Sequence record: ON286972.1
DNA: 43,765 bases
Strand: one strand, 5' to 3'
The position numbers were made by a program, and so were the translations under genes. The notes beneath the pieces are model-generated. The model did no database searches. It saw only the letters and a list, made by a program, of their open reading frames with translations, and had not been told where the DNA came from. How positions within the stretch are numbered: position 1 is the first letter of the stretch; each line of letters opens with the position of its first letter. Of the stretch, positions 9,138-26,907 are shown in pieces.

Positions 9138-9170
9138 GAAAAAGGGTTGACTTAGGTCAGCCCTTTTTTT
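9138..9170 (+). terminator. GGGTTGAC/GTCAGCCC hairpin element (copy 1, no -10 box)
   Basis: AAAAAGGGTTGAC-TTAG-GTCAGCCCTTTTTTT. Confidence 0.85.
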
Positions 9171-9179
9171 ATGGGACAA

Positions 9180-9680
9180 AATGGATGTTCATGATACAAT
9201 GATATTGTACAATTCTGTTGGCATGGATGACATGAACCTGATCCACTCGAAAATGTAGAGGGCAGTTGAGCAGTCCAGCAGTGCGAAGTGCAGAAGAAAC
9301 CCGTCAGATGTGGGCATATTATGAACCCCTCACGGCAATGCGGCACTATAAAGAACCACGTTAGGATGGCTGGTGGTTCCTCGATAGACATATAAGGATA
9401 ACACCTTACGAATTATCTAAGGGAGAGTTATCAAATTTTGTACAGGAAAGTTGCGTCCAAAATTTGAGTACTCACATTAAGTATTTGATTGCATAGATAC
9501 TTAATGAAGATACACTATGTTTAAAAGTGTAGACCGTCATATGAAACTGAAGTAGAGAGAAACAGGATGACCCGCTTTCGTACTCATTAAGAGTAATCTT
9601 CAATGCAATAGCTCTGATACCATCAGCGTCAAATTCCCCTCCCAGCGGGGGGAAGAAAAATCCCTTCCTCAAATCCCGTC
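9180..9680. ncRNA. candidate structured noncoding RNA or hairpin-rich cis element
   Basis: no credible ORF, higher GC than flanks, at least 7 stem-loops; TGnTACAAT at 9192-9200. Confidence 0.35.
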
Positions 9681-9694
9681 AATATTAAAAGTCC

Positions 9695-9723
9695 TTGACA
9701 GTTATTAATCATTCGCGTAGAAT
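9695..9723 (+). promoter_or_regulatory. sigma70 promoter
   Basis: TTGACA-17-TAGAAT. Confidence 0.8.
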
Positions 9724-9787
9724 ACGTAGTATTAGAAGCGAACAGACATCTCGAAGAGATGGATGACTAACTATTAAGGAACATTCA

Positions 9788-9997
9788 ATGAATACTACAA
9801 TCTTTTTAATTGTTGCTCTTTCAATGCAATCCGGTGTACAAATTACCCCTATGAATTCATTAAACCAATGTTTTTCTGTACGTGATAGTACATACGAACA
9901 AGTAAACAAAAATTCTTGGATGACAGTTAGTGAAGAACAAATGTGGTGTTACAAAAGTGATATTAAAGCGAAATTTATTGTAGGACAAACTCAATGA
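9788..9997 (+). CDS. small secreted two-Cys protein
   Basis: hydrophobic N-terminus, AAGGA RBS. Confidence 0.7.
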   Translation: MNTTIFLIVALSMQSGVQITPMNSLNQCFSVRDSTYEQVNKNSWMTVSEEQMWCYKSDIKAKFIVGQTQ

Positions 9998-10188
9998 TTT
10001 ATCGAGTGAGGTTTGAAGTTTGTAAAATTGTTTTCAATAGCAAAGGTGAAGCCTCACTAGATGAAACTATGCACATATATAATCTCCAATTTAGGGCAAA
10101 AACAGAAGCTGATGCATTAGTAAACATGTTTAATTTCAACCATAGGTGCGGGTATCATTTAGTAAGAGTTATAGAGGTTAAAAAGTAA
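9994..10188 (+). CDS. hypothetical protein
   Basis: ATGA coupling. Confidence 0.65.
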   Translation: MIYRVRFEVCKIVFNSKGEASLDETMHIYNLQFRAKTEADALVNMFNFNHRCGYHLVRVIEVKK

Positions 10189-10218
10189 TCACCGAATGCA
10201 GTGAAGAGGAAATCTAAA

Positions 10219-10482
10219 ATGAGTACTATCAATGCATTCAAGCACTTAGACAAAGGTATCAAACACTTTGATGTTGAATGTTTAAATTCAGGTATGAATC
10301 GTTTAGTACAAATTTACATGAAATCGTTTATAGGTATTGACAGTGCACGACTACCAGTATATAATTACTTTATTGAAAGCGTAGAAGGTGAATCACTTCG
10401 TGATTATGGTGAAAGATTTAATAAGAAAGTTTTCACTGCAATAGCAAATGAGATTCATTACTATAAACCCTATGTAATTTAA
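10219..10482 (+). CDS. hypothetical protein
   Basis: GAGGA RBS before ATG 10219. Confidence 0.7.
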   Translation: MSTINAFKHLDKGIKHFDVECLNSGMNRLVQIYMKSFIGIDSARLPVYNYFIESVEGESLRDYGERFNKKVFTAIANEIHYYKPYVI

Positions 10483-10496
10483 TTAGAGGAACTATC

Positions 10497-10664
10497 ATGC
10501 AAATCATTATCTTAATCGTTGGTATCGGTTTGGGCATCTATGGACATTCATGGGTAACTGAGAAGTTTCCTGACACCCGTCCAGATTACTGTACAACTAA
10601 AACAGAAAGTACTGAAAGTATTGGAACTAAGATCGATAAAGTAATCGAGGTGATTAAACAATGA
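10497..10664 (+). CDS. small membrane-anchored protein (55 aa, not in ORF track)
   Basis: GAGGA RBS; MQIIILIVGIGLGIYG... Confidence 0.7.
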   Translation: MQIIILIVGIGLGIYGHSWVTEKFPDTRPDYCTTKTESTESIGTKIDKVIEVIKQ

Positions 10665-10741
10665 TGAAACTTAATATATTTCTGGTTGTATTCACTGTCG
10701 TTGTTATCGGTATTGGTGCACTGGCATATATCCAACCTTAA
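10661..10741 (+). CDS. single-TM microprotein (26 aa)
   Basis: GAGG RBS, ATGA coupling; MMKLNIFLVVFTVVVIGIGALAYIQP. Confidence 0.55.
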   Translation: MMKLNIFLVVFTVVVIGIGALAYIQP

Positions 10742-10752
10742 AGGAAAAATAA

Positions 10753-10953
10753 ATGTTTAAATCGAATACAAATGTTGGTAAGCAGGTTCAATTACTTGAA
10801 GACGTATCCACTATGAGTGGAACCTTCACTAAAGGTCACATCATGACTATTATTGCCGAAACATCCCGTGGCTGGGACTTGGAAGATGCTGATGGTAATC
10901 GCATCCTTGAGGCTGGCTTCTATGGTCATCGTGAATATAAAATTATCGATTAA
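10753..10953 (+). CDS. hypothetical protein
   Basis: AAGGA RBS. Confidence 0.75.
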   Translation: MFKSNTNVGKQVQLLEDVSTMSGTFTKGHIMTIIAETSRGWDLEDADGNRILEAGFYGHREYKIID

Positions 10954-10962
10954 GGATATAAC

Positions 10963-11046
10963 ATGATGTTAGAGGCTATCGTTGGTATTATTAGTTTAGT
11001 CGTCTGTGTAGGTTGGTTTGGGTATCTGATGATTTTTGGCGATTAA
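10963..11046 (+). CDS. single-TM microprotein (27 aa)
   Basis: AAGGA RBS; MMLEAIVGIISLVVCVGWFGYLMIFGD. Confidence 0.55.
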   Translation: MMLEAIVGIISLVVCVGWFGYLMIFGD

Positions 11047-11049
11047 TAC

Positions 11050-11077
11050 TTGACATAAGATATCAGTACTGTATAAT
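11050..11077 (+). promoter_or_regulatory. sigma70 promoter
   Basis: TTGACA-16-TATAAT, AGTACT in spacer. Confidence 0.8.
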
Positions 11078-11121
11078 GTTTATATCAACGACACCCACTT
11101 TAACAAATAATAGGAAATATT

Positions 11122-11400
11122 ATGTCTTTTACCAAAGAAGAACGTGACCTTATTAAAAAAGCAATCTGGTTTTATGCTAATGAAGGGGAGTGCGATGAAG
11201 AAAAAGCACGTGAACTGTGTAATATCCTTGAGCAGAAACAAGAACTGAAAGTTTATCGTATCCGTGTTTTGGATGACGGGGATCGTATTGTCCTAGCTGA
11301 AACAAAAGAAGAAGCAGAACAAATCTTCACTGATAAAAACGAAAATCCACATTGGATGGAAGAAGTCTGTGAAGTAAAAAAAGGTACTTATATCGATTGA
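11122..11400 (+). CDS. hypothetical protein
   Basis: AGGA RBS. Confidence 0.75.
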   Translation: MSFTKEERDLIKKAIWFYANEGECDEEKARELCNILEQKQELKVYRIRVLDDGDRIVLAETKEEAEQIFTDKNENPHWMEEVCEVKKGTYID

Positions 11401-11425
11401 CTGTACTGAATAATAGCAGTATAAT
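11397..11425 (+). promoter_or_regulatory. sigma70 promoter
   Basis: TTGACT-17-TATAAT. Confidence 0.8.
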
Positions 11426-11437
11426 GTTTATATCAAA

Positions 11438-11497
11438 GGGAATGCAGTGAAAGGAAAGACAGCATAATCGTACTCGTCACTGCGTTCCCGCCCTTTT
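11438..11497 (+). other. 13-bp leader stem-loop followed by T-run
   Basis: GGGAATGCAGTGA...TCACTGCGTTCCC then GCCCTTTT. Confidence 0.55.
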
Positions 11498-11518
11498 AAA
11501 TTAAATGAGGAATTAACT

Positions 11519-11827
11519 ATGTTTCAAACTAACACTCAAGGTTTTGTAATCATCGATTTGAATCAAAACAGCGGTTATTGGATGAAACCTACTGACGCAT
11601 GTATGCAGTTTGATTTCTTAGGTTACAGAATTAGTGTAAGTACTGGTGCTTCTGTACTGCGTGGTGGTTGTATCGTTGAACATCTGGTAACTGATCCAGA
11701 AGGTCGTGAGTATGAAATCGCAGGTTCAGTACAAGATGCCATTATGTTTGTATGTCAGCGTGAAATGAATGGTTCGAATTCAAATGCACTGACTCATGCT
11801 CTTTCTCAAGAAGTGGAGGTTCGTTAA
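11519..11827 (+). CDS. hypothetical protein
   Basis: GAGGA RBS. Confidence 0.75.
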   Translation: MFQTNTQGFVIIDLNQNSGYWMKPTDACMQFDFLGYRISVSTGASVLRGGCIVEHLVTDPEGREYEIAGSVQDAIMFVCQREMNGSNSNALTHALSQEVEVR

Positions 11828-12072
11828 TGAAATATATTGTAGCAGTACTAATTGCTTTCCTACTCACTGCATGTGATGCTTCAACAAAAGAACGAACTGG
11901 TGAGTTTGTTTTACCAACTGAACTCAAAGAAGCAGGGTGTAAGATTTATCGTATGCAACAGGAAGGTGCAGGTGCAACTTTGTACACTGTTTACTGTCCT
12001 AATGCAAACACTACTACGTCTTATATGAGTGGTAAAGTTCGCGTGGATACATCTGTGGTTCATGGAGAATAA
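11827..12072 (+). CDS. small lipoprotein
   Basis: lipobox LTAC after hydrophobic leader. Confidence 0.75.
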   Translation: MKYIVAVLIAFLLTACDASTKERTGEFVLPTELKEAGCKIYRMQQEGAGATLYTVYCPNANTTTSYMSGKVRVDTSVVHGE

Positions 12073-12074
12073 CA

Positions 12075-12443
12075 ATGAGTCTTGATACTACTCGTTCGGC
12101 AAATATCTTGGAACGTTTGAATGATGAAGAATATCTTGCTAATGCAAAATATCAGCTTGAAAAACTCATTCGAAATGTAAAATATGTTGATATCACTACA
12201 CAGCTTCCACTAGATGAATATCACAAGTTAAACGAAGATATTGTATATCACCCAAATGAAATTTGGATTGAGTGGGAATCATGGACTCATTCGGTTCTCC
12301 GTATCGAAGGATATTGTGTGAAATATGAAAGTTCACCAGGTGATTTTACAAAAAAACTGTCGATATTGTGCACTGACACACATGAAATAGTTGAGGTGAA
12401 TTTGAATCATATGAAGGGTTGCCGTTGGGGAGATGTTAAATGA
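12075..12443 (+). CDS. hypothetical protein
   Basis: GGAG RBS. Confidence 0.75.
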   Translation: MSLDTTRSANILERLNDEEYLANAKYQLEKLIRNVKYVDITTQLPLDEYHKLNEDIVYHPNEIWIEWESWTHSVLRIEGYCVKYESSPGDFTKKLSILCTDTHEIVEVNLNHMKGCRWGDVK

Positions 12444-12715
12444 TTAAAAAACTCTTGACGGTGTTTGTTGTATTCTGTACAATGTTTCTTACAGCATGTA
12501 ATGATGACGGCAGGTTCAGTGCAAAAGACTTAGTTCGTCAGGATTGTACATTCACAGGTAAGTCTTTTATTAACGAATATGAAATATGTACACAAGCAGG
12601 ACGTATTTGTGGGGGTTGGGAAAAACGTCAGGAGCGTCTGTATGTATATGATTGTCCAGGACACCTCAACAAAGTACTAAGCACACACAAACTTGTTTAT
12701 GATAAGGTTGAATAA
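12440..12715 (+). CDS. small Cys-rich lipoprotein
   Basis: lipobox LTAC; four further Cys. Confidence 0.75.
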   Translation: MIKKLLTVFVVFCTMFLTACNDDGRFSAKDLVRQDCTFTGKSFINEYEICTQAGRICGGWEKRQERLYVYDCPGHLNKVLSTHKLVYDKVE

Positions 12716-12924
12716 TGACTACCAATGAAATGATGCAGGTTATTTGGAATAAAGGTTGTGATATTAAAATCACTAGTACTGATGTTCGTGTATTCAAAAC
12801 TGAATACATGGAATACTTGGACCTTGATACTTATAATAATATTGTATCAATTGAACACAAAGGTGCAGTACTGGAAACAATTGACGTTGTTCTCAAGAAA
12901 GCAACGGATTTATTGGGAGCATAA
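12715..12924 (+). CDS. hypothetical protein
   Basis: TAATG coupling. Confidence 0.65.
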   Translation: MTTNEMMQVIWNKGCDIKITSTDVRVFKTEYMEYLDLDTYNNIVSIEHKGAVLETIDVVLKKATDLLGA

Positions 12925-12925
12925 G

Positions 12926-13072
12926 GTGAACAATAAAGAATGGGAAGAGTACCGCAAGAAGTGCCGAGAGTTTGATAAAGAACTCACTGGTACTGTGAAC
13001 GCAGTAATGTGGGTATCTGCAATAATTGCAGTACTGGGACTGTTTGCAGTTATCATTAATAAGTTTTTTTGA
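12926..13072 (+). CDS. small membrane protein
   Basis: GTG 12926 after GGAG; C-terminal TM. Confidence 0.6.
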   Translation: MNNKEWEEYRKKCREFDKELTGTVNAVMWVSAIIAVLGLFAVIINKFF

Positions 13073-13081
13073 GGAATACAC

Positions 13082-13282
13082 ATGTTTACTTTATATCTAG
13101 CTGTAGTACTAACAAATGGTGAAATCACACGTACATTCGGTGATGGTGTATATAAAACACCTGAGCAGTGTTATTCTGCGACACACTGGCCTCGTGATGC
13201 TGGTGACGAAACTCGTACCGAATACAAATGTATGAAGGTCAAAGGTGACTTTGTTAACCTTAAGGTCATTGAGGTGAAGTAG
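13082..13282 (+). CDS. hypothetical two-Cys protein
   Basis: GAGGA RBS. Confidence 0.7.
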   Translation: MFTLYLAVVLTNGEITRTFGDGVYKTPEQCYSATHWPRDAGDETRTEYKCMKVKGDFVNLKVIEVK

Positions 13283-13788
13283 TGAATCTTAGTACTGATA
13301 AGTTTGTAAAGTTCATAGAGTTTATCAATTTCAATGAGAGCTACAATGGTACGTACAATACTATGAATATTGTATCTGATAAAGTATTTGATAGTACAAT
13401 GTTCTATTTGTATGATACAAACGGTGATAAGCTGTGTGATGTTACATTCGGTATTGGTGATCTTTTTGAATCTGCGGTTTATCTATCTAAACCAACGGTG
13501 CGTGATACATATGAAATTCACTTTCATAATAGACCGAATCACAAAAACATTGTAGAATATGATATACCATCATCACACGAACTGTTCATTGTAGATTACA
13601 GTACTGAAGAGGGTGTATTTCAAAGTTCATTGCTATACAACTTTGAACTACACGATCCTGATATTCCTAAAGTACTGGCAATTTCGAATAAGGTATGTGA
13701 ATTGCCATATAACATATACATGTCAGTTCCTGGTAAAAGAGTAGGTAATTTCTGTAAAGCCTTTGACATACAAGCGGATGATAAATGA
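13282..13788 (+). CDS. hypothetical protein (EExxFQxSL family)
   Basis: motif STEEGVFQSSL shared with 18804 gene. Confidence 0.7.
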   Translation: MNLSTDKFVKFIEFINFNESYNGTYNTMNIVSDKVFDSTMFYLYDTNGDKLCDVTFGIGDLFESAVYLSKPTVRDTYEIHFHNRPNHKNIVEYDIPSSHELFIVDYSTEEGVFQSSLLYNFELHDPDIPKVLAISNKVCELPYNIYMSVPGKRVGNFCKAFDIQADDK

Positions 13789-14009
13789 ACAGATACGTGA
13801 TTGAATACGTGGGTATATCTGAATTTGATAACATTCGTGGCTATGAAAAGGTCATGAGTGAACGCACGATATATGTTAGGGGTCGCGATGAAGCCCATGT
13901 TCTCTCTTTACTGTTAAATGACCTGACAAAGTTCAATACAACAAAGACACAACGTTATATTGAAACAATTAAATCTATTAAACTTTTAGACGAGGATGAT
14001 GAAGAATGA
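13785..14009 (+). CDS. hypothetical protein
   Basis: ATGA coupling. Confidence 0.7.
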   Translation: MNRYVIEYVGISEFDNIRGYEKVMSERTIYVRGRDEAHVLSLLLNDLTKFNTTKTQRYIETIKSIKLLDEDDEE

Positions 14010-14218
14010 ATTTATATCTAGTAGAAGGTACAGTGCAGGTTTTCCGTTTTGATGGTGATCGTGGTATGCGTTTCTCACATGTTGAAGAATTTAAATTTGT
14101 CGTACATGCAGAAGGTGAGTACGAAGCTGAGATTAAAGTATCTGAATCCTTTGATAAGAAAGAAACCGTAGATGTACAGTATCAGCAACTACAATTTAAA
14201 GTGTGGCCTACGCTTTAA
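14006..14218 (+). CDS. hypothetical protein
   Basis: ATGA coupling. Confidence 0.7.
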   Translation: MNLYLVEGTVQVFRFDGDRGMRFSHVEEFKFVVHAEGEYEAEIKVSESFDKKETVDVQYQQLQFKVWPTL

Positions 14219-14222
14219 AAAC

Positions 14223-14251
14223 TTGACACGCATGTAAAAAGCGAGTATTAT
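14223..14251 (+). promoter_or_regulatory. sigma70 promoter
   Basis: TTGACA-17-TATTAT. Confidence 0.75.
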
Positions 14252-14282
14252 ATCTGTATTATGAATTAACTGAGGAATACGT

Positions 14283-14948
14283 ATGCTCGCCAATTTAAGT
14301 TACATTATTAGTGATGATATGGTACAAAGTCGTGGGATGTATCTTGAGAAAGTTCCATACGATAGCGATGGTATCAAAGGAACTTTATACGAAAGTCGTT
14401 TTGACAGAAAGCATCCATTCTGGGAAAAGGCTAATCTAACGGAAGAAGATAGTAATCGTTTATTTTGTGCTGTGCAGACACCTACACCTGGTATATTAGC
14501 GGGTTATGGTATAGATAAAGTCATTAACTTTATGACAGACTATGAAGTTATTGAACGTCTTCAATATATTAATACGAACAATGGTGAGTTCTATAATTCT
14601 GATGATTTTCTTGCTATGTGTAGTGCTTCATATGAGAGTGAATTATTGCCAAGTGGTAGACCATTCCCATTGTCAACACATTGTAATTCCCCTTACGGTG
14701 TAGCTGACAACTTACAGCAGATCCTTAAGAAACATAAGAATGTTCTTACATCTGAAATGGAAGTTGTTATTGGATTTCATCCAGTGTACAAGGAAGATCA
14801 ACCTGAACATGGTGGGTGGCGTTGGCATAAGCACGGCACATACATTGGTACTCATAAGAAAAAGCATGAGTACTTGTATGATGAAGAAGGTATTGATGTT
14901 GTTTATTGTTACGAACTAATCCCAGTAAAGAAAAAGGAAACACTATAA
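14283..14948 (+). CDS. phage hypothetical protein (GGWRWHKxGxYIG motif)
   Basis: GAGGA RBS; distinctive Trp/His motif. Confidence 0.8.
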   Translation: MLANLSYIISDDMVQSRGMYLEKVPYDSDGIKGTLYESRFDRKHPFWEKANLTEEDSNRLFCAVQTPTPGILAGYGIDKVINFMTDYEVIERLQYINTNNGEFYNSDDFLAMCSASYESELLPSGRPFPLSTHCNSPYGVADNLQQILKKHKNVLTSEMEVVIGFHPVYKEDQPEHGGWRWHKHGTYIGTHKKKHEYLYDEEGIDVVYCYELIPVKKKETL

Positions 14949-15190
14949 TGTTAATTTTATACGTTGTACTGATTTTATTAGTTAACTTTTCTCCAACTAT
15001 TTTAACTTTAGTATGGGGTAAATTTTATGATGCTGTAAAAGTATTTCTCTTGAATACTGCATGGGTATTGGTAAGTCTGACTCTTTATTGGTCTACTGAT
15101 TGGATGATGATTGTGAGTCATATACTACTATATATTTCATTCCTAATGTTGTTCCAAGAAAAAGAAGTACTTGACAAACTTGAAGGTTAG
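14948..15190 (+). CDS. membrane protein
   Basis: TAATG coupling; hydrophobic. Confidence 0.7.
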   Translation: MLILYVVLILLVNFSPTILTLVWGKFYDAVKVFLLNTAWVLVSLTLYWSTDWMMIVSHILLYISFLMLFQEKEVLDKLEG

Positions 15191-15199: not shown

Positions 15200-15222
15200 A
15201 TCCTTCTACTAAGGGGGATATT

Positions 15223-17032: not shown

Positions 17033-17034
17033 TT

Positions 17035-17072
17035 AAAAAAGGTTGACTAACGTCAGCCTTTTTTGTTATACT
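17035..17072 (+). promoter_or_regulatory. fused terminator/promoter element (copy 2)
   Basis: AAAAAAGGTTGAC-TAAC-GTCAGCCTTTTTT-GT-TATACT. Confidence 0.85.
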
Positions 17073-17207: not shown

Positions 17208-17211
17208 ACAT

Positions 17212-17403
17212 ATGTTGATTTATCAATGTGATAACATTCGTGTTATACAGCATCCCTACTTACAAATCTTTGATGTGCAGCAGTATATGGAAGGTGATGA
17301 CCCAAGAACCTATGGTCGTAAGTATGATTACTTCACTGTAAAGCAGTGTCGTAACATCAAAGAAGTACGACAATTAGTTCAAGAACTTCAAAATAAAGGT
17401 TGA
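17212..17403 (+). CDS. hypothetical protein
   Basis: GAGGA RBS before ATG 17212; stop lies inside next element. Confidence 0.7.
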   Translation: MLIYQCDNIRVIQHPYLQIFDVQQYMEGDDPRTYGRKYDYFTVKQCRNIKEVRQLVQELQNKG

Positions 17404-17429
17404 CTTCGGTCAGCCTTTTTTGTTATAAT
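17394..17429 (+). promoter_or_regulatory. fused terminator/promoter element (copy 3)
   Basis: AAAGGTTGAC-TTCG-GTCAGCCTTTTTT-GT-TATAAT. Confidence 0.9.
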
Positions 17430-18758: not shown

Positions 18759-18763
18759 ACTAC

Positions 18764-18795
18764 GGGGTTGACATAAGTCAGCCCTTTTGTATAAT
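18764..18795 (+). promoter_or_regulatory. fused terminator/promoter element (copy 4)
   Basis: GGGGTTGAC-ATAA-GTCAGCCCTTTT-G-TATAAT. Confidence 0.85.
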
Positions 18796-19825: not shown

Positions 19826-20049
19826 TGAAAAGGTATAAAATTGAATACCTACTTAAAGTAAGAGAGAAAAGTATTAGTAGTGAGAAATACACCAGTGAGA
19901 TATTCGTCAGAGATGAGTATTACATTGGTGAAAATGAAGTTGAAGTACTGTTACAATGCATAGAAAATGAATTTCAAGATATGACACGTTATATGTCATT
20001 TGAGATATCGTGTGCAAAAGTTACATTCTTGAACAATACTTCATATTAA
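19822..20049 (+). CDS. hypothetical protein
   Basis: GTGA coupling, GGAG RBS. Confidence 0.65.
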   Translation: MMKRYKIEYLLKVREKSISSEKYTSEIFVRDEYYIGENEVEVLLQCIENEFQDMTRYMSFEISCAKVTFLNNTSY

Positions 20050-20093
20050 AAAAGGGTTGACTTTTGTTGACCCTTTTTGCTATTCTATAAATA
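20048..20093 (+). promoter_or_regulatory. hairpin element (copy 5) followed by T4-late-type TATAAATA
   Basis: AAAAAGGGTTGAC-TTTT-GTTGACCCTTTTT; TATAAATA at 20086-20093. Confidence 0.75.
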
Positions 20094-21678: not shown

Positions 21679-21680
21679 TA

Positions 21681-21720
21681 AAAAAAGAGGTTGACTTCGG
21701 TCAGCCTTTTTTGCTATAAT
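21681..21720 (+). promoter_or_regulatory. fused terminator/promoter element (copy 6)
   Basis: AGAGGTTGAC-TTCG-GTCAGCCTTTTTT-GC-TATAAT. Confidence 0.9.
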
Positions 21721-21748
21721 ACTCTCATAACCTAAAAGGAGAAACTCT

Positions 21749-22024
21749 ATGAACACATACGAACGTTTAGTTGGCTCAATGCGTTATGAAGAAATTTTAA
21801 GTGATATTGAAGAACTGAAAGACTCTAAAAGTTACATCCACTTAGATGAACTTATCGTGAAGTATGGGGAGGTTGGTGCAAAAGAATTAATTTGCTTTAT
21901 GGTTCATGTTCGAAATTTAAATTACTTTGATCTTTCATCGAAGAACGGTGAACCGAATCTTTATTATCTATATTATTTGAAACATAAAGATGCATGTAAT
22001 AAATTATTCTTAGAACTTTTATAA
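21749..22024 (+). CDS. hypothetical protein
   Basis: AAGGAG RBS. Confidence 0.75.
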   Translation: MNTYERLVGSMRYEEILSDIEELKDSKSYIHLDELIVKYGEVGAKELICFMVHVRNLNYFDLSSKNGEPNLYYLYYLKHKDACNKLFLELL

Positions 22025-22037
22025 CTGGAGATATCTA

Positions 22038-22298
22038 ATGCAAAACCCTGAATTGAAAATGTTTACACAAATCCGTCTTGCTCGTGTTGAACATGACACT
22101 AACTATGTACTGAACGATGGTCCTCCACAACGCGTTGAAGTTGGTTATATTGACGTTGATAATTCACAATCTCTTCTGATTACCATTGGTTCTAACTCTT
22201 ACAGTGTTGCTACACTGGAGAGTGTATTGTCCCTGGCACAATCCGCAAGGATTGCCCGTAACGCTCTTATGAACTGTGATGAACCTGATAATGAATGA
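22038..22298 (+). CDS. hypothetical protein
   Basis: GGAG RBS. Confidence 0.75.
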   Translation: MQNPELKMFTQIRLARVEHDTNYVLNDGPPQRVEVGYIDVDNSQSLLITIGSNSYSVATLESVLSLAQSARIARNALMNCDEPDNE

Positions 22299-22629
22299 TT
22301 ATATGTATGAATTAAACCTGGTATCGTTTATCGTATCAGGACTAGGATGGATGTACTATATGCTTGGGTATATTTTATTATTCTTCCGATACAATACATT
22401 CTACAAACGCTATTGGGATGATGCACCAATTCACTTCTTCGCATTTGTATTCTTAACTATGGCAGTGGGTGAAGTACTGCTAACTGGTATCCAAAGTACT
22501 GGTGGAATGATGTGCACACTAACAACATTCTTTGTTGTTTTTGGGACTGTAGTTTGGTTTTTCGCGTGGGGACTCTTCTCTTTGATTATGAAACTTGAGA
22601 AACTCCGAGACAAATTACCAGAGCGTTGA
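22291..22629 (+). CDS. 3-TM membrane protein, similar to the 27.9-30.4 kb array
   Basis: LLFFRY after TM1, ends KLRDKLPER. Confidence 0.65.
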   Translation: MNDYMYELNLVSFIVSGLGWMYYMLGYILLFFRYNTFYKRYWDDAPIHFFAFVFLTMAVGEVLLTGIQSTGGMMCTLTTFFVVFGTVVWFFAWGLFSLIMKLEKLRDKLPER

Positions 22630-22639
22630 TGAAAAGTAT

Positions 22640-22667
22640 TTGACAAACTCAACTAGTACTGTATAAT
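22640..22667 (+). promoter_or_regulatory. sigma70 promoter
   Basis: TTGACA-16-TATAAT with AGTACT in spacer; short leader hairpin GGGATGA/TCATCCC downstream. Confidence 0.8.
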
Positions 22668-22714
22668 GTTTATCAAGGGGATGAACTTCTCATCCCTACA
22701 ATCGAGGAACTACC

Positions 22715-23266
22715 ATGATTACTTTTAAGAAAACTGCCAACCACATCCATGAAATTTACATTAACGGTCACAAAGCTGGCCTTCTTCGTTTACTCGCCCA
22801 TCATCCTGATGTTACCGTATCTGATAATGAACCTAAAGATTGGCGTGTATTTTTCTTTGGAAAGTACAGTGATTTTCAAGTATCAAACCTGAAGAACATT
22901 CGTTCAGTATGCACGTTAACTGAAATTAAAGAAAAGTTAACCAAAGCATTGAAAACTAATCCAGATGGTGTTCTTCCACCTGATAACTTTGTAGAGAAAG
23001 GATATGCCTTAGCTCATTTCAAAGATGGTACTATTCAATCTATCAGTACTGAATATGAATACCAATGGACTGAGTACTTCACTTATGGCTCCCGTAATAC
23101 TTTGATGGCTTCACGTAGTAAATTGGAAGAAGTACTGACTCGTATGAATGAACGCGAGCGTCAGTACTATGAACCAGAAATGTGGAGTTCAACTTACATT
23201 GACCGTATTGACTATGTTATGATGACTCCAATCTTTGACACTGCTTACTATGATTCTTTGAAATAA
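22715..23266 (+). CDS. hypothetical protein
   Basis: GAGGA RBS. Confidence 0.8.
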   Translation: MITFKKTANHIHEIYINGHKAGLLRLLAHHPDVTVSDNEPKDWRVFFFGKYSDFQVSNLKNIRSVCTLTEIKEKLTKALKTNPDGVLPPDNFVEKGYALAHFKDGTIQSISTEYEYQWTEYFTYGSRNTLMASRSKLEEVLTRMNERERQYYEPEMWSSTYIDRIDYVMMTPIFDTAYYDSLK

Positions 23267-23277
23267 GGATAACTTAT

Positions 23278-23454
23278 ATGAAACTACGTACTCGCAATCG
23301 ACTGATGGATGCCCTATATCATGAACAGTGTTCATTAAATGAAGTAAAGCGTCAGTTAATGTACACATATCAGTTACCCGCTCGTGTTGCAAAACAACGT
23401 GCTAACGAATTGCTGAAAGAAGCAATCGAGTACTGGGAATCTGATTCGTACTAA
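23278..23454 (+). CDS. hypothetical protein (58 aa, not in ORF track)
   Basis: AAGGA RBS; MKLRTRNRLMDALYHEQ... Confidence 0.7.
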   Translation: MKLRTRNRLMDALYHEQCSLNEVKRQLMYTYQLPARVAKQRANELLKEAIEYWESDSY

Positions 23455-23493
23455 TATTACGTGATATGTCACGTTAATTAAGTGAGGCGATAA

Positions 23494-23745
23494 ATGAAAA
23501 TATTATTAGTTCTAATACTACTAATTGTTTTACCATTTACTTTAGTATCCCCTGAACTTGCATGGAATGTGTTTGTGTACTTAGTATGTACTATTGTAGT
23601 AAATGGTATCTTGTTCTTAGTTCTATTCATAAATGGAATAGGACACGGTGGAGGATGGACCAGTACTGCTGATATTGTACATAAAACCACTATGTCTTTA
23701 TTTGTAGTGTGGAATTTATTCTGGACTTGGTTTGTGTTCTTCTAA
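23494..23745 (+). CDS. membrane protein
   Basis: GAGG RBS; hydrophobic. Confidence 0.7.
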   Translation: MKILLVLILLIVLPFTLVSPELAWNVFVYLVCTIVVNGILFLVLFINGIGHGGGWTSTADIVHKTTMSLFVVWNLFWTWFVFF

Positions 23746-23754
23746 TTAAAAAAT

Positions 23755-24126
23755 ATGAATATAGATTTGAAAGGTGCAACACGAACTGTCATACTCATTG
23801 GGGAATATGCTATCAAGATTCCAACCTTCAAAAGCTGGAAGTTATTCCTAACTGGAATGATAGCTAACCTCAATGAACGCTCATGGATGCAGTACTCCAA
23901 GCGTAGTGACAGTGGGATATGTCCTACTCTGTGGTCATCGCGAACTGGCTTAATAACAGTACAGAAACGTTGTAAGCCAGTACAACATAGGGGTTTGTTT
24001 TGGGTGGAGTTGAGTGCATTAGCATTGAATTCAGAGTTGAGTACTGACTTCTTCTATTCAGATGCGAAGCCAGAAAACTTTGGATATTTGAATGGTAAGT
24101 TAGTTAAGCTTGATTATGGAGATTAA
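23755..24126 (+). CDS. minimal protein-kinase-like protein
   Basis: GATRTV (Gly loop), AIK, NLNE, DAKPEN catalytic loop, DYG. Confidence 0.7.
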   Translation: MNIDLKGATRTVILIGEYAIKIPTFKSWKLFLTGMIANLNERSWMQYSKRSDSGICPTLWSSRTGLITVQKRCKPVQHRGLFWVELSALALNSELSTDFFYSDAKPENFGYLNGKLVKLDYGD

Positions 24127-24147
24127 TATGTACGCATTGTATAATAA

Positions 24148-24186
24148 AGAAAAGGATTGACTTCAGTCAGCCCTTTTTTCTATAAT
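24148..24186 (+). promoter_or_regulatory. fused terminator/promoter element (copy 7)
   Basis: AAAAGGATTGAC-TTCA-GTCAGCCCTTTTTT-C-TATAAT. Confidence 0.85.
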
Positions 24187-24214
24187 CATTTCATCGAAAC
24201 GAGAGGATGAATAC

Positions 24215-24652
24215 ATGACACGCATTAACTTAGTACATGTTAAAGAACTTGCTGACCAACATCTGATGGCTGAATATCGTGAACTTCCACGTGTGTTTGG
24301 TGCTGTACAAAAACATGTTCAAGCACGTAAGCGTGTACGTGATTTCAAAATTAACAGTACTTATCTGTTAGGTTCAGGTCATGTAACATTCTTCTACGAC
24401 AAGTTACTATACTTACAGAAGCGTCATATTGATATTGTTAACGAATGTTTGCGTCGTGGTATGAAGATTCAAAACACTGAAGTAAACGACATTAGCGGCT
24501 TCCCTGCTGAGTTTTGTAATGACTACGTACCATCGGAGTCCGAGATTAAAACATCACGCGAGCGTTTGATTGAGAAGCTTCAGATGAAGCCTAAGTGGTA
24601 TAAGTTTACTGATGTTGAGCTACCTATATATTATGTTGATATGATACAATGA
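24215..24652 (+). CDS. denV: pyrimidine dimer DNA glycosylase / endonuclease V
   Basis: [35 protein letters not shown] closely follows T4 DenV. Confidence 0.97.
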
Positions 24653-24876
24653 ATGATGAAGAATTCAAAAAATATGCGATTGCGAAGCTTGATTCATACA
24701 AGTCACGCGAAACGTATAAATTTAATCCTGATAAAACAAAAGCATCTATAAGATGGATGATTAATTCACCCAAATATACATTTGACGAAAAATATTCATG
24801 GATAGTGCAATGTAGTGATTATGAGGATTTGGTATATAATATTAAACTGTGTTGGTATGAATACAACAATAAATGA
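24649..24876 (+). CDS. hypothetical protein
   Basis: ATGA coupling. Confidence 0.65.
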
Positions 24877-24879
24877 TAT

Positions 24880-24915
24880 AAGGGGTTGACTTCGGTCAGC
24901 CCTTTTTGCTATAAT
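24880..24915 (+). promoter_or_regulatory. fused terminator/promoter element (copy 8)
   Basis: GGGGTTGAC-TTCG-GTCAGCCCTTTTT-GC-TATAAT. Confidence 0.9.
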
Positions 24916-24941
24916 CATTTCATCAAATTAAGAGGTGATAC

Positions 24942-25181
24942 ATGAAACTATCTTTTATACGTTTAGCAGAATTCTTCGGTACTGATATAATTACTTTACA
25001 ACAAATTGCAGACAATACTTCATTAAGTACACAAGAAGTACTTGACTTAGATGTGATAGAGTGTGATAATACTTCTATCGATTATAAAGAAGGTCTTGTC
25101 GAAAAAGATAAGATTCAGGCTAAGATTAATGGTGCTGGACGGGTTCAGTACTGGAAAGGAGTTTTAAGTCATGCCAGCTAA
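24942..25181 (+). CDS. hypothetical protein
   Basis: GAGG RBS. Confidence 0.7.
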   Translation: MKLSFIRLAEFFGTDIITLQQIADNTSLSTQEVLDLDVIECDNTSIDYKEGLVEKDKIQAKINGAGRVQYWKGVLSHAS

Positions 25182-26868
25182 ATTAACCCCTAAACAAGCA
25201 AAAGAAAAATTCAACAAAAAAGTATTAGAACATAACGTTCCAATTGAAGCTGATTATAGTAAGTATGAAAATGCCAAATTAAAAAACATCCAAGTAGTTT
25301 GCAATGATGTATTAAAACACAAATCAGGCATATCACAAATATATCTTATGGATCACGCAAACCTCACACACCCATCCAAAAAATTTGGTTGTCCTGAATG
25401 TGAAGACTGGTATAATGGTCATGCTAAAAGTTTAGATATTTTAATTGTTAGGGAAAGAATTAATTCTTGGATTAGTACTTATGGCGGGATTATTGATACG
25501 GTTAGTGGTGAAGTTGAAGTTTATAAAAATAATTCATCCAAAATACCATATATTTGTAAAAATGGAACTAAAAAAACGCTTACTATTTCTTCACTTGGCG
25601 ATGAAATCGGTTGTAATTGTTCTAAATGTAAAGCTGAATTAATATCAGAAATCGAAGATAACAATGAATATACATCCATGACTACTGTTGATGATTGTGT
25701 TACAATTTCCCATTTTAAATTTGGGGATGATGTTGCATTCTCGTGGATTTCACCATTGGAAATGAAAAAACATGGTTACTGTCTTGCCGAAAAAATGAAA
25801 GAAAAAGCATTGTCGGTTGGTAAAAATATTATTGGATATGCAATATCATCTCTTAGTGAATGGAAAAATGAAAAAACTCCTGTAATAACCGAACACGAAG
25901 GAGTATTATATCGTATTTCCAAAGCATCATATTTGATCAATAATAATATAGTACATAGACCACATTATACAAAAAATAATTTTTTATATTATTTTTACAA
26001 ATGTTCACCTAACAATCAACTTATTACACCAATCCTAATACCTGATGATATTGGTACAAAAAAGAAAATTAAAGTATGTTATAAATCATGTGGGTGTGAA
26101 TATGATATATCTGTGGACGTTATAATGAACAGAAATTTAAAAACTTGTGGAAACTGTAAAAATATAGATACTAATAAATTTATAGAACAGTGCTTGGAGT
26201 TCACTTCAAGTGGAGATTATATCTATGATAGAGTAAACTATATAAATCAAAGTACACCTGTAACTATAGTTCATAAAATTTACGGCGAATTCAAAAGTAC
26301 ACCACAAAATCACTTAATACATTTAAAAAACGGTTTGAAATATGATACAGCTAACTTTAAAATAAAAAATTTAACTCAATTTAAAATTAAAGCAAATGAA
26401 GTTCATAATAACTTATATAATTATGATAAAGTTGATTATGTAAATTCTTCAACGAAAGTATTAATAACTCATCCAGTATATGGAGACTTTTGGCAAACTC
26501 CAGCAAGTCACCTTGGTGGGTGTGGTCATCCACTTGCGGCTGGTCATTCTCAGCAATATGCATATATTCATAATATTTTGGATGGTGTTTTATCTGTAGC
26601 ATTGAAATATGGGATTGAAAAGCAGAAAGGTAAGAGGGTGATGCAGCAAAATAAAAAATCCATGTTTCAAGTTCAATCTCTGTATACTTATTTTTTTCCA
26701 TCTGTATACGAATGTAAGCAAGCTGAAAAAGAATGTAAGAAACTATTTGGTAAAGGTGTTTTAACTAAACAAGAAATGCCAGACGGGTATACTGAAACAA
26801 CTACACCAAACAACATAGATAAAATTATTGCCATCTATGAAAAATGGGGTGGGGTGAAACAAAACTAA
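25171..26868 (+). CDS. free-standing homing endonuclease-like protein (DUF723-type repeats, Zn knuckles, C-terminal GIY-YIG-like domain)
   Basis: YDKVDYVNSSTKVLITHPVYGDFWQTP repeats; CPEC, CSKC, CGNC; YAYI..LKYGI..R..AE..DGYTET. Confidence 0.7.
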   Translation: MPAKLTPKQAKEKFNKKVLEHNVPIEADYSKYENAKLKNIQVVCNDVLKHKSGISQIYLMDHANLTHPSKKFGCPECEDWYNGHAKSLDILIVRERINSWISTYGGIIDTVSGEVEVYKNNSSKIPYICKNGTKKTLTISSLGDEIGCNCSKCKAELISEIEDNNEYTSMTTVDDCVTISHFKFGDDVAFSWISPLEMKKHGYCLAEKMKEKALSVGKNIIGYAISSLSEWKNEKTPVITEHEGVLYRISKASYLINNNIVHRPHYTKNNFLYYFYKCSPNNQLITPILIPDDIGTKKKIKVCYKSCGCEYDISVDVIMNRNLKTCGNCKNIDTNKFIEQCLEFTSSGDYIYDRVNYINQSTPVTIVHKIYGEFKSTPQNHLIHLKNGLKYDTANFKIKNLTQFKIKANEVHNNLYNYDKVDYVNSSTKVLITHPVYGDFWQTPASHLGGCGHPLAAGHSQQYAYIHNILDGVLSVALKYGIEKQKGKRVMQQNKKSMFQVQSLYTYFFPSVYECKQAEKECKKLFGKGVLTKQEMPDGYTETTTPNNIDKIIAIYEKWGGVKQN

Positions 26869-26869
26869 A

Positions 26870-26907
26870 CAAAAGGGTTGACTTCGGTCAGCCCTTTTTG
26901 CTATAAT
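26870..26907 (+). promoter_or_regulatory. fused terminator/promoter element (copy 9)
   Basis: AAAAGGGTTGAC-TTCG-GTCAGCCCTTTTT-GC-TATAAT. Confidence 0.9.

What the first reader, a model, noticed from the sequence alone, without database searches (positions are those of the whole stretch)
9138..26907. Nine-copy fused terminator/promoter element: the -35 box is the hairpin arm
Seen: consensus AAAAGGGTTGAC-(TTCG)-GTCAGCCCTTTTT-GC-TATAAT(-CATTTCATC) at 9138, 17035, 17394, 18764, 20048, 21681, 24148, 24880 and 26870. TTGACT/A in the left arm lies 16-18 nt from TATAAT, with the right arm and T-tract forming the spacer. One ~40-bp unit thus ends the upstream transcript and restarts the next. Established analogue: PeSL (promoter-early stem-loop) cassettes that mediate modular shuffling in T4-type phages. 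Inference: these act as insulators and recombination hubs bounding exchangeable gene modules.
Basis: partly seen in the sequence, partly recalled or inferred. Interest (0 to 1): 0.7.

Follow-up and report, generated by a model that had tools for sequence, protein, structure and literature searches.

The report
Fused terminator-promoter cassettes, jumbo coliphage
The nine repeats are real: they are compact terminator-plus-early-promoter units between early genes of the jumbo E. coli phage A4, the same kind of element already described as PeSLs in T4-like phages, so this is a new example and not a new mechanism.

Summary
The window is the last 43.8 kb of Escherichia phage A4 (Asteriusvirus, 355 kb). 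Six have a near-consensus sigma-70 promoter whose -35 (TTGACT/A) is the left hairpin arm, 16 or 18 nt from TATAAT. Two have a weak -10. The copy at 9144 has none and is a terminator only.

The RNA hairpins fold at -12 to -21 kcal/mol. Across 66 distinct copies from several phages the stem shows compensatory changes, most loops are UUCG or GNRA, and a conserved T·G wobble weakens the antisense hairpin.

A4 has 13 copies, all in early small-gene regions. The same element occurs in related jumbo phages and in Vibrio phage nt-1, one of the phages in which PeSLs were published. A 2026 preprint describes the same layout in bacteria.

The recombination-hub idea is only weakly supported. Homology with relatives often resumes exactly at an element, but the excess over ordinary gene junctions is marginal (6/9 versus 13/38, p = 0.08). 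The events I resolved used microhomology or in-gene junctions. No transcript data exist.

Verdict: new member of a known kind, low to moderate interest.

The parts
9138..9170 (+). Copy 1, terminator only. A-tract, hairpin 9144-9163 (GGGTTGAC TTAG GTCAGCCC) and T7. There is no -10. It sits 8 nt after the stop of the sigma-70-family gene A4_181.
   Evidence: RNA fold -21 kcal/mol, z -6.5. Orthologues in slurp01 and E9.1 read GGGTTGGC TTAT GCCAACCT, a compensatory A-U to G-C change that alters the '-35'.
17034..17072 (+). Copy 2. Hairpin 17040-17059 (AGGTTGAC TAAC GTCAGCCT), T5, -35 at 17043-17048, weak -10 TATACT at 17067-17072. It lies at the border between a divergent block and a conserved block.
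   Evidence: Fold -16.6 kcal/mol. Absent at this site in relatives. Homology at 87-95% resumes at 17068/17088.
17391..17429 (+). Copy 3. Hairpin 17397-17416 (loop TTCG), -35 TTGACT at 17400-17405, 18-nt spacer, TGT-TATAAT at 17424-17429. The stop codon TGA of A4_206 lies inside TTGAC. It drives A4_207 (ATG at 17459).
   Evidence: Fold -14 kcal/mol. Orthologous copy in all five relatives.
18759..18795 (+). Copy 4. Hairpin 18765-18784 (loop ATAA), T4, -35 TTGACA at 18768-18773, 16-nt spacer, TATAAT at 18790-18795 (12/12 consensus). The annotated ATG of A4_211 is only 8 nt after the -10.
   Evidence: Fold -15 kcal/mol.
20048..20086 (+). Copy 5, variant. Hairpin 20054-20073 (GGGTTGAC TTTT GTTGACCC, two G·U pairs), T5, weak -10 TATTCT at 20081-20086. 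It lies upstream of A4_214 (a virion structural protein in 121Q).
   Evidence: Fold -16.1 kcal/mol. Homology with all five relatives starts exactly at 20048.
21681..21720 (+). Copy 6. Hairpin 21688-21707 (AGGTTGAC TTCG GTCAGCCT), -35 at 21691-21696, 18-nt spacer, TGC-TATAAT at 21715-21720. It drives A4_215 (ATG at 21749).
   Evidence: Fold -16.7 kcal/mol. A 1.1-1.8 kb insertion or replacement in relatives lies just downstream.
24148..24186 (+). Copy 7. Hairpin 24154-24173 (GGATTGAC TTCA GTCAGCCC, one A·C mismatch), T6, -35 at 24157-24162, TATAAT at 24181-24186. It drives denV (A4_222, ATG at 24215).
   Evidence: This is the weakest fold, -11.7 kcal/mol. Just upstream is the remnant of a gene deleted between two 12-nt repeats AATAAAGAAAAG that are both present in 121Q.
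24877..24915 (+). Copy 8, consensus. Hairpin 24883-24902 (GGGTTGAC TTCG GTCAGCCC), T5, TGC-TATAAT at 24910-24915, then CATTTCATC. It drives A4_224 (ATG at 24942).
   Evidence: Fold -16.3 kcal/mol. Homology at 90-97% with relatives resumes at 24862-24872, after non-homologous cassettes.
26869..26907 (+). Copy 9, consensus. Hairpin 26875-26894, T5, TGC-TATAAT at 26902-26907. It drives A4_226 (a P-loop NTPase-like protein, ATG at 26936).
   Evidence: Fold -17.6 kcal/mol. Homology with 121Q, Turkey3 and Ec-M-J resumes at 26848-26871, after unrelated genes.

Best explanation
Each unit is a composite intrinsic terminator plus host sigma-70 early promoter, about 40 bp long. It is a PeSL-type, or 'promoter-coupled', terminator, and it sits between co-oriented early genes of an Asteriusvirus jumbo phage.

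Inferred mechanism:
1. Transcripts from upstream form an 8-bp G+C-rich stem that A·U pairs can extend to about 13 bp. The loop is usually the stable C(UUCG)G tetraloop. U4-7 follows, and RNA polymerase releases there, about 15 nt before the next start site.
2. On the DNA the same bases are used again. The upstream A-tract is UP-element-like. The left arm supplies the -35 (TTGACT/A). The right arm and the T-tract form the 16-18-nt spacer. TGn-TATAAT follows. The start is predicted at the A of CATTTCA. A leader of about 20 nt with GAGG precedes the ATG.
3. The unit therefore resets transcription gene by gene and acts as an insulator. By analogy with bacterial coupled units, polymerase bound at the promoter may also increase termination.
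4. The conserved T·G wobble (TTGAC against GTCAG) keeps the RNA stem but makes both the -35 and the hairpin strand-specific.

A secondary and much weaker inference is that the repeated 40-60 bp of identity marks module edges and sometimes serves in recombination.

Shown here: presence, copy number, placement, folding, covariation, conservation and distribution. Inferred: termination, initiation, insulation and any role in recombination.
For: 1. Nine copies against 0 expected by chance.
2. Promoter geometry holds in 6 of 9 copies, with TGn in 4.
3. The hairpins fold at -11.7 to -21 kcal/mol, z -3.2 to -6.7.
4. In 66 distinct copies, 94.7% of cells pair. Four pairs show double changes. 18 cells have compensatory changes against 5.1±1.8 in shuffles, 0/500.
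5. Loops are UNCG in 60 and GNRA in 6 of 89 copies. The T-run is 4-6 in 73 of 89. The -10 matches at 5/6 or better in 72 of 89.
6. The seven -10-less rows (five copies, two of them picked up in both orientations) are all orthologues of the sigma-gene terminator, and there TTGAC can change to TTGGC with a compensating change in the other arm.
7. The wobble is U·G in 56 of 66 copies. The sense core folds at -9.8 to -12.9 in eight of the nine copies (24154: -5.5), the antisense core at -5 to -8.6 kcal/mol.
8. All 13 A4 copies are on the + strand in small-ORF early regions, and none lies between records 25 kb and 320 kb.
9. The G17 record annotates orthologous hairpins as terminators.
10. The same design occurs in nt-1 PeSL intergenic regions.
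11. PeSL promoter and terminator activities were shown with lacZ reporters in RB49/phi1 (PMC2839356).
12. Bacterial coupled units have the -35 in the stem-loop DNA, and the T-tract boosts the promoter (bioRxiv 10.64898/2026.08.19.745784).
Against: I found no RNA 5'- or 3'-end data for A4 or any Asteriusvirus. An 18-nt spacer is longer than the 17-nt optimum. Copy 24154 has a mismatched, weak stem. Copy 18765 leaves only 8 nt between the -10 and the annotated ATG. The copy set for covariation was collected with a pattern that required TTG and at most 4 mismatches, so TTG invariance is by construction. Many rows are orthologues, so shuffle counts overstate independence. The phage encodes its own sigma-70-family factor (A4_181), so use of the host sigma is assumed.
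Confidence: 0.8

Rival explanations
1. Module edges coincide with the elements for reasons other than element-mediated recombination. Variable genes, several of them HNH or homing-endonuclease-like, enter at the 3' ends of transcription units by their own mobility or by illegitimate or microhomology recombination. Selection then keeps only recombinants that leave the downstream promoter unit intact. On this view the elements are landmarks, not hubs.
For: Only right edges of variable blocks tend to lie at elements; left edges lie at ordinary gene ends. The excess over other junctions is marginal: 6/9 vs 13/38, p=0.08. Comparable breaks occur without any element, at 10189/10232 (an HNH gene in relatives), 13291, 22640 and 27708. 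The deletion next to 24154 used a 12-nt repeat inside a gene. The junction at 17040 cuts into a gene. Relatives annotate HNH endonucleases in the variable slots.
Against: Homology resumes within a few bases of the element start in several independent slots: 20048, 24862-24872 and 26848-26871. A homologous gene plus its trailing element sits in different slots in A4 and Turkey3. 121Q carries a half element at L011:23478. Relatives have element-ORF-element cassettes. PeSL-to-PeSL exchange and mini-circles were shown experimentally in RB49/phi1.
Confidence: 0.5
2. The inverted repeat is mainly a DNA operator. A dimeric phage or host regulator binds GGGTTGAC-N4-GTCAGCCC over the -35 to shut off early promoters, and the terminator look is secondary.
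For: It is an 8-N4-8 palindrome centred on the -35 and repeated at many early promoters. The 2026 preprint notes that terminator palindromes can double as transcription-factor sites (section list).
Against: The repeat is imperfect at the DNA level, with T opposite G in 56 of 66 copies, yet it pairs as RNA. Loops favour RNA-stable UNCG and GNRA tetraloops. Stem positions covary instead of keeping a fixed sequence. A T-tract always follows. One copy works without a promoter, after the sigma gene.
Confidence: 0.07
3. The units are terminators or 3'-end stabilisers only, and the promoter resemblance is incidental in an A+T-rich genome.
For: Promoter-like hexamer pairs are common here: 103 found against 86 expected in 19 kb. 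Copy 9144 is terminator only. G17 annotates the hairpins only as terminators.
Against: TTGAC is kept although stem pairing alone would allow any complementary sequence, and it drifts only in the copy that lacks a -10. The -10 matches at 5/6 or better at a fixed 16-18 nt in 72 of 89 copies, often with TGn. Each unit lies 26-29 nt upstream of an ATG with a GAGG ribosome-binding site. All 20 near-consensus promoters in the window are on the coding strand.
Confidence: 0.05

Closest known systems
PeSLs (promoter-early stem-loops) of the schizo-T4 Vibrio phages nt-1 and KVP40 (Comeau, Arbiol & Krisch 2014, PMC4122927)
   Same: The design is the same: A3-4 G3, a stem that contains TTG(A/C)C, C3 T3-6, then a -10. 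Examples in nt-1 are AAAAGGGTTGCTTCGGCAGCCCTTTTTTGTTATTCT and GGGTTGACAGATGTCAGCCC at 44637. The T·G wobble is at the same position. They lie between small ORFs of plastic early regions, next to indels.
   Different: The host phage belongs to a different lineage (Asteriusvirus, a 355-kb RaK2-like jumbo phage) and is not in Straboviridae. The A4 promoters are closer to consensus (TTGACT and TATAAT with TGn) than the nt-1 consensus (TTGYVH and TAWWAT). No wet-lab data exist for A4.
PeSLs of RB49 and phi1 (Arbiol et al. 2010, PMC2839356)
   Same: These are composite sigma-70 early promoters plus stem-loops placed between a stop codon and a Shine-Dalgarno sequence. They are repeated in hyperplastic regions. 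One of the five published subclasses has the stem-loop overlapping the -35.
   Different: In RB49/phi1 the stem is mostly polyG/polyC and usually lies between the -35 and -10 or over the -10. Promoter and terminator activity and mini-circle formation were demonstrated there. Here they are only inferred.
Promoter-coupled terminators of bacteria (Fletcher ... Grainger 2026 preprint, bioRxiv 10.64898/2026.08.19.745784)
   Same: The -35 coincides with the stem-loop DNA. The terminator T-tract lies just upstream of the -10. Termination and start sites lie within a few tens of bp, between tandem genes.
   Different: The bacterial units have diverse sequences and were defined by Term-seq and Cappable-seq. 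The phage units form a repeated, near-identical family. The exact element is absent from 5,426 complete E. coli genomes.
Hairpins annotated as ARNOLD terminators in Escherichia phage vB_EcoM_G17 and as a terminator in Cronobacter phage GAP32
   Same: These are orthologous or homologous hairpins in RaK2-like jumbo phages.
   Different: The records annotate them only as terminators. In the papers I could search, the overlap with the RpoD-like promoters is not described for this group.

Membership tests
PeSL (promoter-early stem-loop) cassettes | A sigma-70-like early promoter (-35 and -10 about 17 nt apart) inside the repeated motif | tested here: met
   Six of nine copies score 11-12 of 12 with a 16- or 18-nt spacer. 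Two have a weak -10 and one has none. Across phages 72 of 89 copies have a -10 matching at 5/6 or better.
PeSL (promoter-early stem-loop) cassettes | A stable stem-loop within or next to the promoter that could act as a terminator or attenuator | tested here: met
   Folds of -11.7 to -21 kcal/mol, z -3.2 to -6.7, followed by T4-7. Stem covariation is present. Termination itself was not measured.
PeSL (promoter-early stem-loop) cassettes | [quoted passage not shown] | tested here: met
   The hairpin starts 5-10 nt after the stop in 7 of 9 copies. GAGG and the ATG lie 26-29 nt after the -10 in 5 copies.
PeSL (promoter-early stem-loop) cassettes | Many copies concentrated in plastic regions rich in small genes of unknown function | tested here: met
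   All 13 copies in the 355-kb genome lie at record 15-24 kb and 320-339 kb, among small hypothetical genes. None lies in structural or replication regions.
PeSL (promoter-early stem-loop) cassettes | Association with insertions, deletions and replacements between close relatives | tested here: inconclusive
   Six of 9 element junctions are break edges against 13 of 38 other junctions (Fisher p=0.08). Four of 10 right edges are at elements (p=0.11 against the junction share, 2e-4 against the base share).
PeSL (promoter-early stem-loop) cassettes | Exchange between two PeSLs, seen as hybrid elements or mini-circles | not testable with these tools
   This needs inverse PCR or reads. Sequence hints only: a half element in 121Q and a gene plus element in different slots in A4 and Turkey3. 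The two events resolved here were not element-to-element.
PeSL (promoter-early stem-loop) cassettes | Promoter and terminator activity shown by reporters | not testable with these tools
   This was done for RB49/phi1 PeSLs. Nothing is available for A4.
Promoter-coupled terminators (bacterial, 2026 preprint) | The -35 lies in the stem-loop DNA and the T-tract lies immediately upstream of the -10 | tested here: met
   TTGAC is bases 4-8 of the left arm. T4-7 ends 2-3 nt before the -10.
Promoter-coupled terminators (bacterial, 2026 preprint) | A mapped termination site within 35 bp upstream of a mapped same-strand start site | not testable with these tools
   The predicted distance from T-tract to start is about 15 nt, but there are no Term-seq or 5'-end data.
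Intrinsic (Rho-independent) terminator | A G+C-rich stem of at least 5 bp, a loop of 3-8 nt and a U-rich tail directly after the stem | tested here: met
   The core is 8 bp with 5-6 G·C pairs in most copies (4 in 20054 and 24154), a 4-nt loop and T4-7. The simple scan itself picked up 3 of the 9.

The most novel reading that the evidence does not exclude
A nearly identical core of about 33 nt (GGGTTGAC TTCG GTCAGCCC TTTTTGCTAT) occurs in unrelated phage lineages: Asteriusvirus and other RaK2-like jumbo phages, Straboviridae such as Aeromonas phage 65 and KVP40-like Vibrio phages, and Vequintavirinae such as Cronobacter CR9. The most novel reading not excluded is that this is a horizontally mobile regulatory cassette that spreads between phage families and seeds module exchange. 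Its conserved T·G wobble would then be a selected device that makes one palindrome a one-way promoter and a one-way terminator. The alternative is that each lineage converged on the same optimum.
Probability: 0.2. Interest if true: 0.55.

Novelty: new member of a known kind. Interest (0 to 1): 0.3.

Why it matters
The finding extends PeSL-type fused terminator/promoter units from T4-like phages to the RaK2-like jumbo phages. It gives a ready sequence signature for annotating early transcription units in these poorly annotated 350-kb genomes, where records now list at most 'terminator'. The unit is also a very compact natural part, about 40 bp, that could both insulate and restart transcription. 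Its conserved G·U wobble suggests a simple rule for making such parts one-directional. The recombination-hub idea, the more interesting part, remains unproven here.

Tried and rejected
1. Rfam on the whole window at gathering threshold gave nothing. A permissive search of 9100-9800 gave only weak terminator-like sRNA hits.
2. The ORF-free 530 nt after copy 1 was folded and is not unusually structured, z -0.07. It also has no notable repeats.
3. A search of 5,426 complete E. coli genomes for the element found no match, so it was not borrowed from the host.
4. IMG/VR scans with the full element found only contigs of 348-366 kb, the size of this phage group. The hairpin plus T-tract alone also hit contigs of 127, 235 and 247 kb. 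This gave no insight beyond the GenBank phage search.
5. I looked for published descriptions in Asteriusvirus or RaK2-like phages. The CBB paper lists RpoD-like promoters and terminators separately, the Sharanji paper does not mention promoters or terminators, and the PA5oct RNA-seq paper lists TTGAC/TATAATA promoters and terminators without noting overlap.
6. I looked for clean element-to-element deletions with hybrid elements in all pairwise comparisons of six phages. None was found that could be resolved unambiguously.
7. Pfam on the genes next to the elements was mostly uninformative: A4_226 is P-loop NTPase-like and A4_181 has sigma-70 regions 2-4.
8. I had thought the T·G wobble would be universal. 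It is the majority state (56 of 66), but 9 copies have a T-A pair.

Full report
IDENTITY OF THE WINDOW. The window matches Escherichia phage A4 (ON286972.1, Asteriusvirus, 355,528 bp, host E. coli LF82) at 100% identity over the 10 kb searched. By coordinates it is record positions 311,764-355,528. Positions 1-30,951 carry about 75 small + strand genes, nearly all hypothetical. Among them are a sigma-70-family factor (A4_181, 8174-9136; Pfam regions 2, 3 and 4) and denV. From 30,982 onward the genes are on the - strand and include an array of RCC1-like genes. There are no N runs.

OBSERVATION. GGGTTGACNNNNGTCARCCC with up to 2 mismatches gives + strand hits at 9144, 17040, 17397, 18765, 20054, 21688, 24154, 24883 and 26875. 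The reverse-strand hits are the same palindromes. 100 shuffles gave none. Reading the flanks gives the following layout:
- an A-rich run;
- an 8-nt left arm containing TTGAC;
- a 4-nt loop (TTCG in four copies; otherwise TTAG, TAAC, ATAA, TTTT, TTCA);
- a right arm GTCAGCC(C/T);
- T4-7, then G(C/T);
- TATAAT.

The consensus scan and my own scan place TTGACT-N18-TATAAT at 17400, 21691, 24157, 24886 and 26878, and TTGACA-N16-TATAAT at 18768. Four of these have the extended -10 TGn. Copy 17040 has TATACT and copy 20054 has TATTCT. Copy 9144 has no -10 and is followed by about 650 nt without a + strand ORF.

PLACEMENT. The hairpin starts 5-10 nt after the upstream stop codon in seven copies. At 17397 the stop codon TGA of A4_206 is the TGA inside TTGAC. 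At 24154 the distance is 28 nt. In five copies the next ATG lies 26-29 nt after the -10, preceded by GAGG. The window has 20 near-consensus sigma-70 promoters, all on the + strand between 2420 and 27801. This is an early region, and the hairpin-bearing promoters are one subset of its promoters.

STRUCTURE.
- As RNA the nine units fold into the expected hairpin at -11.7 to -21 kcal/mol. Z-scores are -3.2 to -6.7 against dinucleotide shuffles.
- I collected copies from A4, five relatives, G17, IMG/VR contigs, nt-1, Vibrio D480, Aeromonas phage 65 and Cronobacter CR9. This gave 122 instances and 96 distinct 74-mers.
- On 66 distinct 32-mers the 12-pair helix is paired in 94.7% of cells. Four pairs show changes on both sides: G-C to A-U or U-A at the stem base, G-C to A-U at pair 9-24, and A-U to G-C at pair 13-20. 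There are 18 compensatory cells against 5.1±1.8 in shuffles (0/500). Versions with the 3' partner slid by 1-3 columns pair far worse.
- Two caveats apply. The collection pattern required TTG and at most 4 mismatches, so TTG invariance is by construction, although double changes were if anything penalised. Many rows are orthologues.
- Loops are UNCG in 60 and GNRA in 6 of 89 copies. The T-run is 4-6 in 73 of 89. These are RNA-level signatures.

DUAL CONSTRAINT. The -10 matches at 5/6 or better in 72 of 89 copies. The seven rows with 3/6 or less are five copies, two of them picked up in both orientations, and all are orthologues of the terminator after the sigma gene (9144). In slurp01 and E9.1 that copy reads GGGTTGGC TTAT GCCAACCT. 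The '-35' has drifted there, with a compensating change that keeps the stem. Where a promoter is present, TTGAC is kept. Where it is absent, only pairing is kept.

WOBBLE. The fourth stem pair is T opposite G (TTGAC against GTCAG) in 56 of 66 distinct copies and T-A in 9. The nt-1 units (TTGC against GCAG) have the same wobble. As a result the sense core folds at -9.8 to -12.9 kcal/mol in eight of the nine window copies (24154, with its mismatch, at -5.5), while the antisense core has a C·A mismatch and folds at -5 to -8.6. The bottom strand reads CTGAC instead of TTGAC. My inference is that the wobble makes both the terminator and the -35 one-directional.

DISTRIBUTION. I scanned the A4 record piece by piece and found 13 + strand copies. 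Nine are in the window. Four lie at record 15,077, 17,843, 21,152 and 23,911. Three of these four are the variant GGATTGAC TCCG GTCAGTCC, which carries a compensatory change, and the fourth is TGGTTGAC TTCG GTCAGCCA. All four have the -10 TATTAT. No copy lies between record 25 kb and 320 kb, where the structural and replication genes are. Eight to ten copies occur in the syntenic regions of slurp01, 121Q, E9.1, Turkey3 and Ec-M-J. A BLAST search with one unit hits 138 phage records, including RaK2, K64-1, GAP32, Serratia BF, Yersinia fHe-Yen9-04 and Erwinia jumbo phages. It also hits Aeromonas phage 65, KVP40-like Vibrio phages and Cronobacter CR3/CR9. In D480, phage 65 and CR9 the 20-nt hairpin is identical to the A4 consensus and is followed by a T-tract and a -10-like box upstream of a gene. 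The element is absent from 5,426 complete E. coli genomes.

COMPARISON WITH KNOWN ELEMENTS.
- Arbiol et al. 2010 defined PeSLs in RB49/phi1 as sigma-70-like early promoters combined with stem-loops that terminate transcription. They described five subclasses by stem-loop position, one of which overlaps the -35. They showed both activities with lacZ reporters and showed PeSL-to-PeSL mini-circles (PMC2839356).
- Comeau et al. 2014 extended PeSLs to PST/T4 and to nt-1/KVP40. The nt-1 stem-loop consensus is A3-4G3-loop-C3T3-4 and the -35 is TTGYVH (PMC4122927).
- Reading nt-1 itself shows AAAAGGGTTGCTTCGGCAGCCCTTTTTTGTTATTCT and AAAAGGGTTGCACTATGCAGCCCTTTTTAGTATTAT in the published PeSL-rich 51-56 kb segment. 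It also shows GGGTTGACAGATGTCAGCCC-T6-GTATCAT at 44,637. The A4 unit is therefore the nt-1 type of PeSL in another phage lineage.
- A 2026 preprint reports that bacterial 'promoter-coupled terminators' are widespread. In them the -35 coincides with the stem-loop DNA, the T-tract just upstream of the -10 enhances the promoter, and an active coupled promoter reduces terminator read-through in a proximity-dependent way.
- I found no paper that describes the overlap in Asteriusvirus or RaK2-like phages. The G17 record annotates the hairpins as ARNOLD terminators. The CBB paper lists RpoD-like promoters with UP-like elements and 74 terminators separately.

RECOMBINATION-HUB CLAIM. I compared the window with five relatives by blastn and compared all pairs by megablast.

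In favour:
- Homology starts at 20048 in all five relatives.
- It starts at 17068/17088, and at 24862-24872 after non-homologous cassettes.
- It starts at 26848-26871 in three relatives after unrelated genes.
- Two HSPs overlap at 24143-24154, with 238-658 bp extra in the relatives.
- Relatives have element-ORF-element cassettes, for example 121Q 15555/15738 around a 114-bp ORF.
- 121Q has a half element at L011:23478.
- The C-terminal half of A4_225 plus its trailing element is homologous to a Turkey3 gene plus element. The DNA match is A4 26522-26927 with L013 25017-25423 at 78%, and the proteins are 48% identical (E 5e-78). The Turkey3 gene sits upstream of the A4_224 orthologue, not downstream as in A4.

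Against:
- At the level of gene junctions, 6 of 9 element junctions are break edges against 13 of 38 others (Fisher p=0.08). Four of 10 distinct right edges are at elements (p=0.11 against the junction share; 2e-4 against the share of bases).
- The relatives are not independent samples.
- Usually only the right edge of a variable block is at an element. This is what one expects if each element simply stays attached to the conserved gene it drives.
- Strong breaks also occur without elements: 10189/10232 (an HNH gene in relatives), 13291, 27708, and 22640, which is exactly the -35 of a plain promoter.
- The deletion next to 24154 joined two 12-nt repeats AATAAAGAAAAG, one inside gene 216 of 121Q and one at its end.
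- At 17040 a divergent gene (A4_204, 56% identical to its orthologue) plus an element abuts a 3' fragment of the resident version of that same gene.
- Several variable genes are annotated as HNH endonucleases, which move on their own.

I therefore rate the hub idea as possible but not shown.

MECHANISM AND VERDICT. The best explanation, at confidence 0.8, is a fused intrinsic terminator and host-sigma-70 early promoter that resets transcription between early genes. Every segment is used twice:
- the A-tract serves as stem extension and as an UP-like element;
- the left arm serves as the -35;
- the right arm and T-tract serve as the spacer;
- TGn-TATAAT follows as the extended -10.

Termination, initiation and any interplay between polymerases are inferred from sequence, from tested PeSLs in other phages and from bacterial coupled units. 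The feature is real, and it is a new member of a known kind. The one point that may be new is the conserved wobble as a directionality device, together with the near-identity of the core across unrelated phage families, which could reflect spread or convergence.

Noticed in passing
window 2420, 11050, 11397, 22640; L003 (A4 record) 6000-25000: There is a second, more abundant family of intergenic repeats. In the window, plain promoters of the form TTGACA...GTACTG-TATAAT-GTTTAT(AT)CAA occur without a terminator hairpin. In the first 25 kb of the record there are 20 or more copies of AAAAAGTACTTGCA-N-GTATAAT-TTTACATCGAGG, each followed by a 5'-leader hairpin GGGGGAAATGGTTCCCCC upstream of tiny ORFs. 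In these the stem-loop lies downstream of the -10.
   Followed up: partly
L003 (A4 record) 7851, 12572, 12866, 16149: A third design occurs here: a hairpin CAGTACTATTGACATAG...GATAGTACTGG with TTGACA at the top of the stem and CATAAT after it, but with no T-tract (-12.5 to -16 kcal/mol). It is a promoter embedded in a palindrome that does not look like a terminator.
   Followed up: no
window 9164-9690: About 530 nt after the sigma-factor gene terminator have no + strand ORF of 40 aa or more. The stretch is conserved at about 77% in relatives and ends at a promoter (TTGACA-N17-TAGAAT at 9695). It has no Rfam family, and folding is not better than shuffles (z -0.07).
   Followed up: partly
window 15872-15950: This is a non-homologous terminator-then-promoter composite. 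A 15-bp hairpin AAATACTTGTGTACT-AGTTA-AGTACGCAAGTATTT plus a T-run lies after A4_201, directly followed by TTAATA-N16-TATAAT upstream of A4_202.
   Followed up: no
window 24126-24156; L011 22619-22888: Gene 216 of 121Q (270 bp) is missing in A4. Its first nine codons are fused to the element. The deletion joined two 12-nt direct repeats AATAAAGAAAAG that are both present in 121Q.
   Followed up: yes
window 25171-26868 (A4_225), 26378-26502; L013 24062-25360: A4_225 (565 aa, no Pfam hit) contains internal repeats of about 60 aa. A 125-bp segment varies in copy number between phages. Its C-terminal half is 48% identical to a Turkey3 protein annotated DUF4379, which sits in a different gene slot. 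121Q, E9.1 and Ec-M-J have unrelated HNH or other endonuclease genes in this slot.
   Followed up: partly
window 34139-43765, - strand: This is a tandem array of seven paralogous genes of about 1.1-1.35 kb annotated as DNA condensation (RCC1-like) proteins, followed by a kelch-like gene. The number and integrity of these genes differ between relatives, and several are split in 121Q.
   Followed up: no
window 11122-11400 (A4_187): This 92-aa protein is annotated as a sigma-70-family sigma factor, but it has no Pfam match at E≤0.01. The annotation looks doubtful. A4_181 does carry sigma-70 regions 2, 3 and 4.
   Followed up: partly
window 18790-18804: The annotated ATG of A4_211 lies only 8 nt after a perfect TATAAT. 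Either the mRNA is nearly leaderless or the true start is a downstream ATG preceded by GGAAGG.
   Followed up: no
L011 (121Q) 23478-23500: This is a half element: GGGTTGACTTCGGT followed by unrelated sequence and an ATG. It has the left arm and loop only, with no right arm, T-tract or -10. It resembles the 'degraded PeSLs' described for nt-1 and PST.
   Followed up: partly
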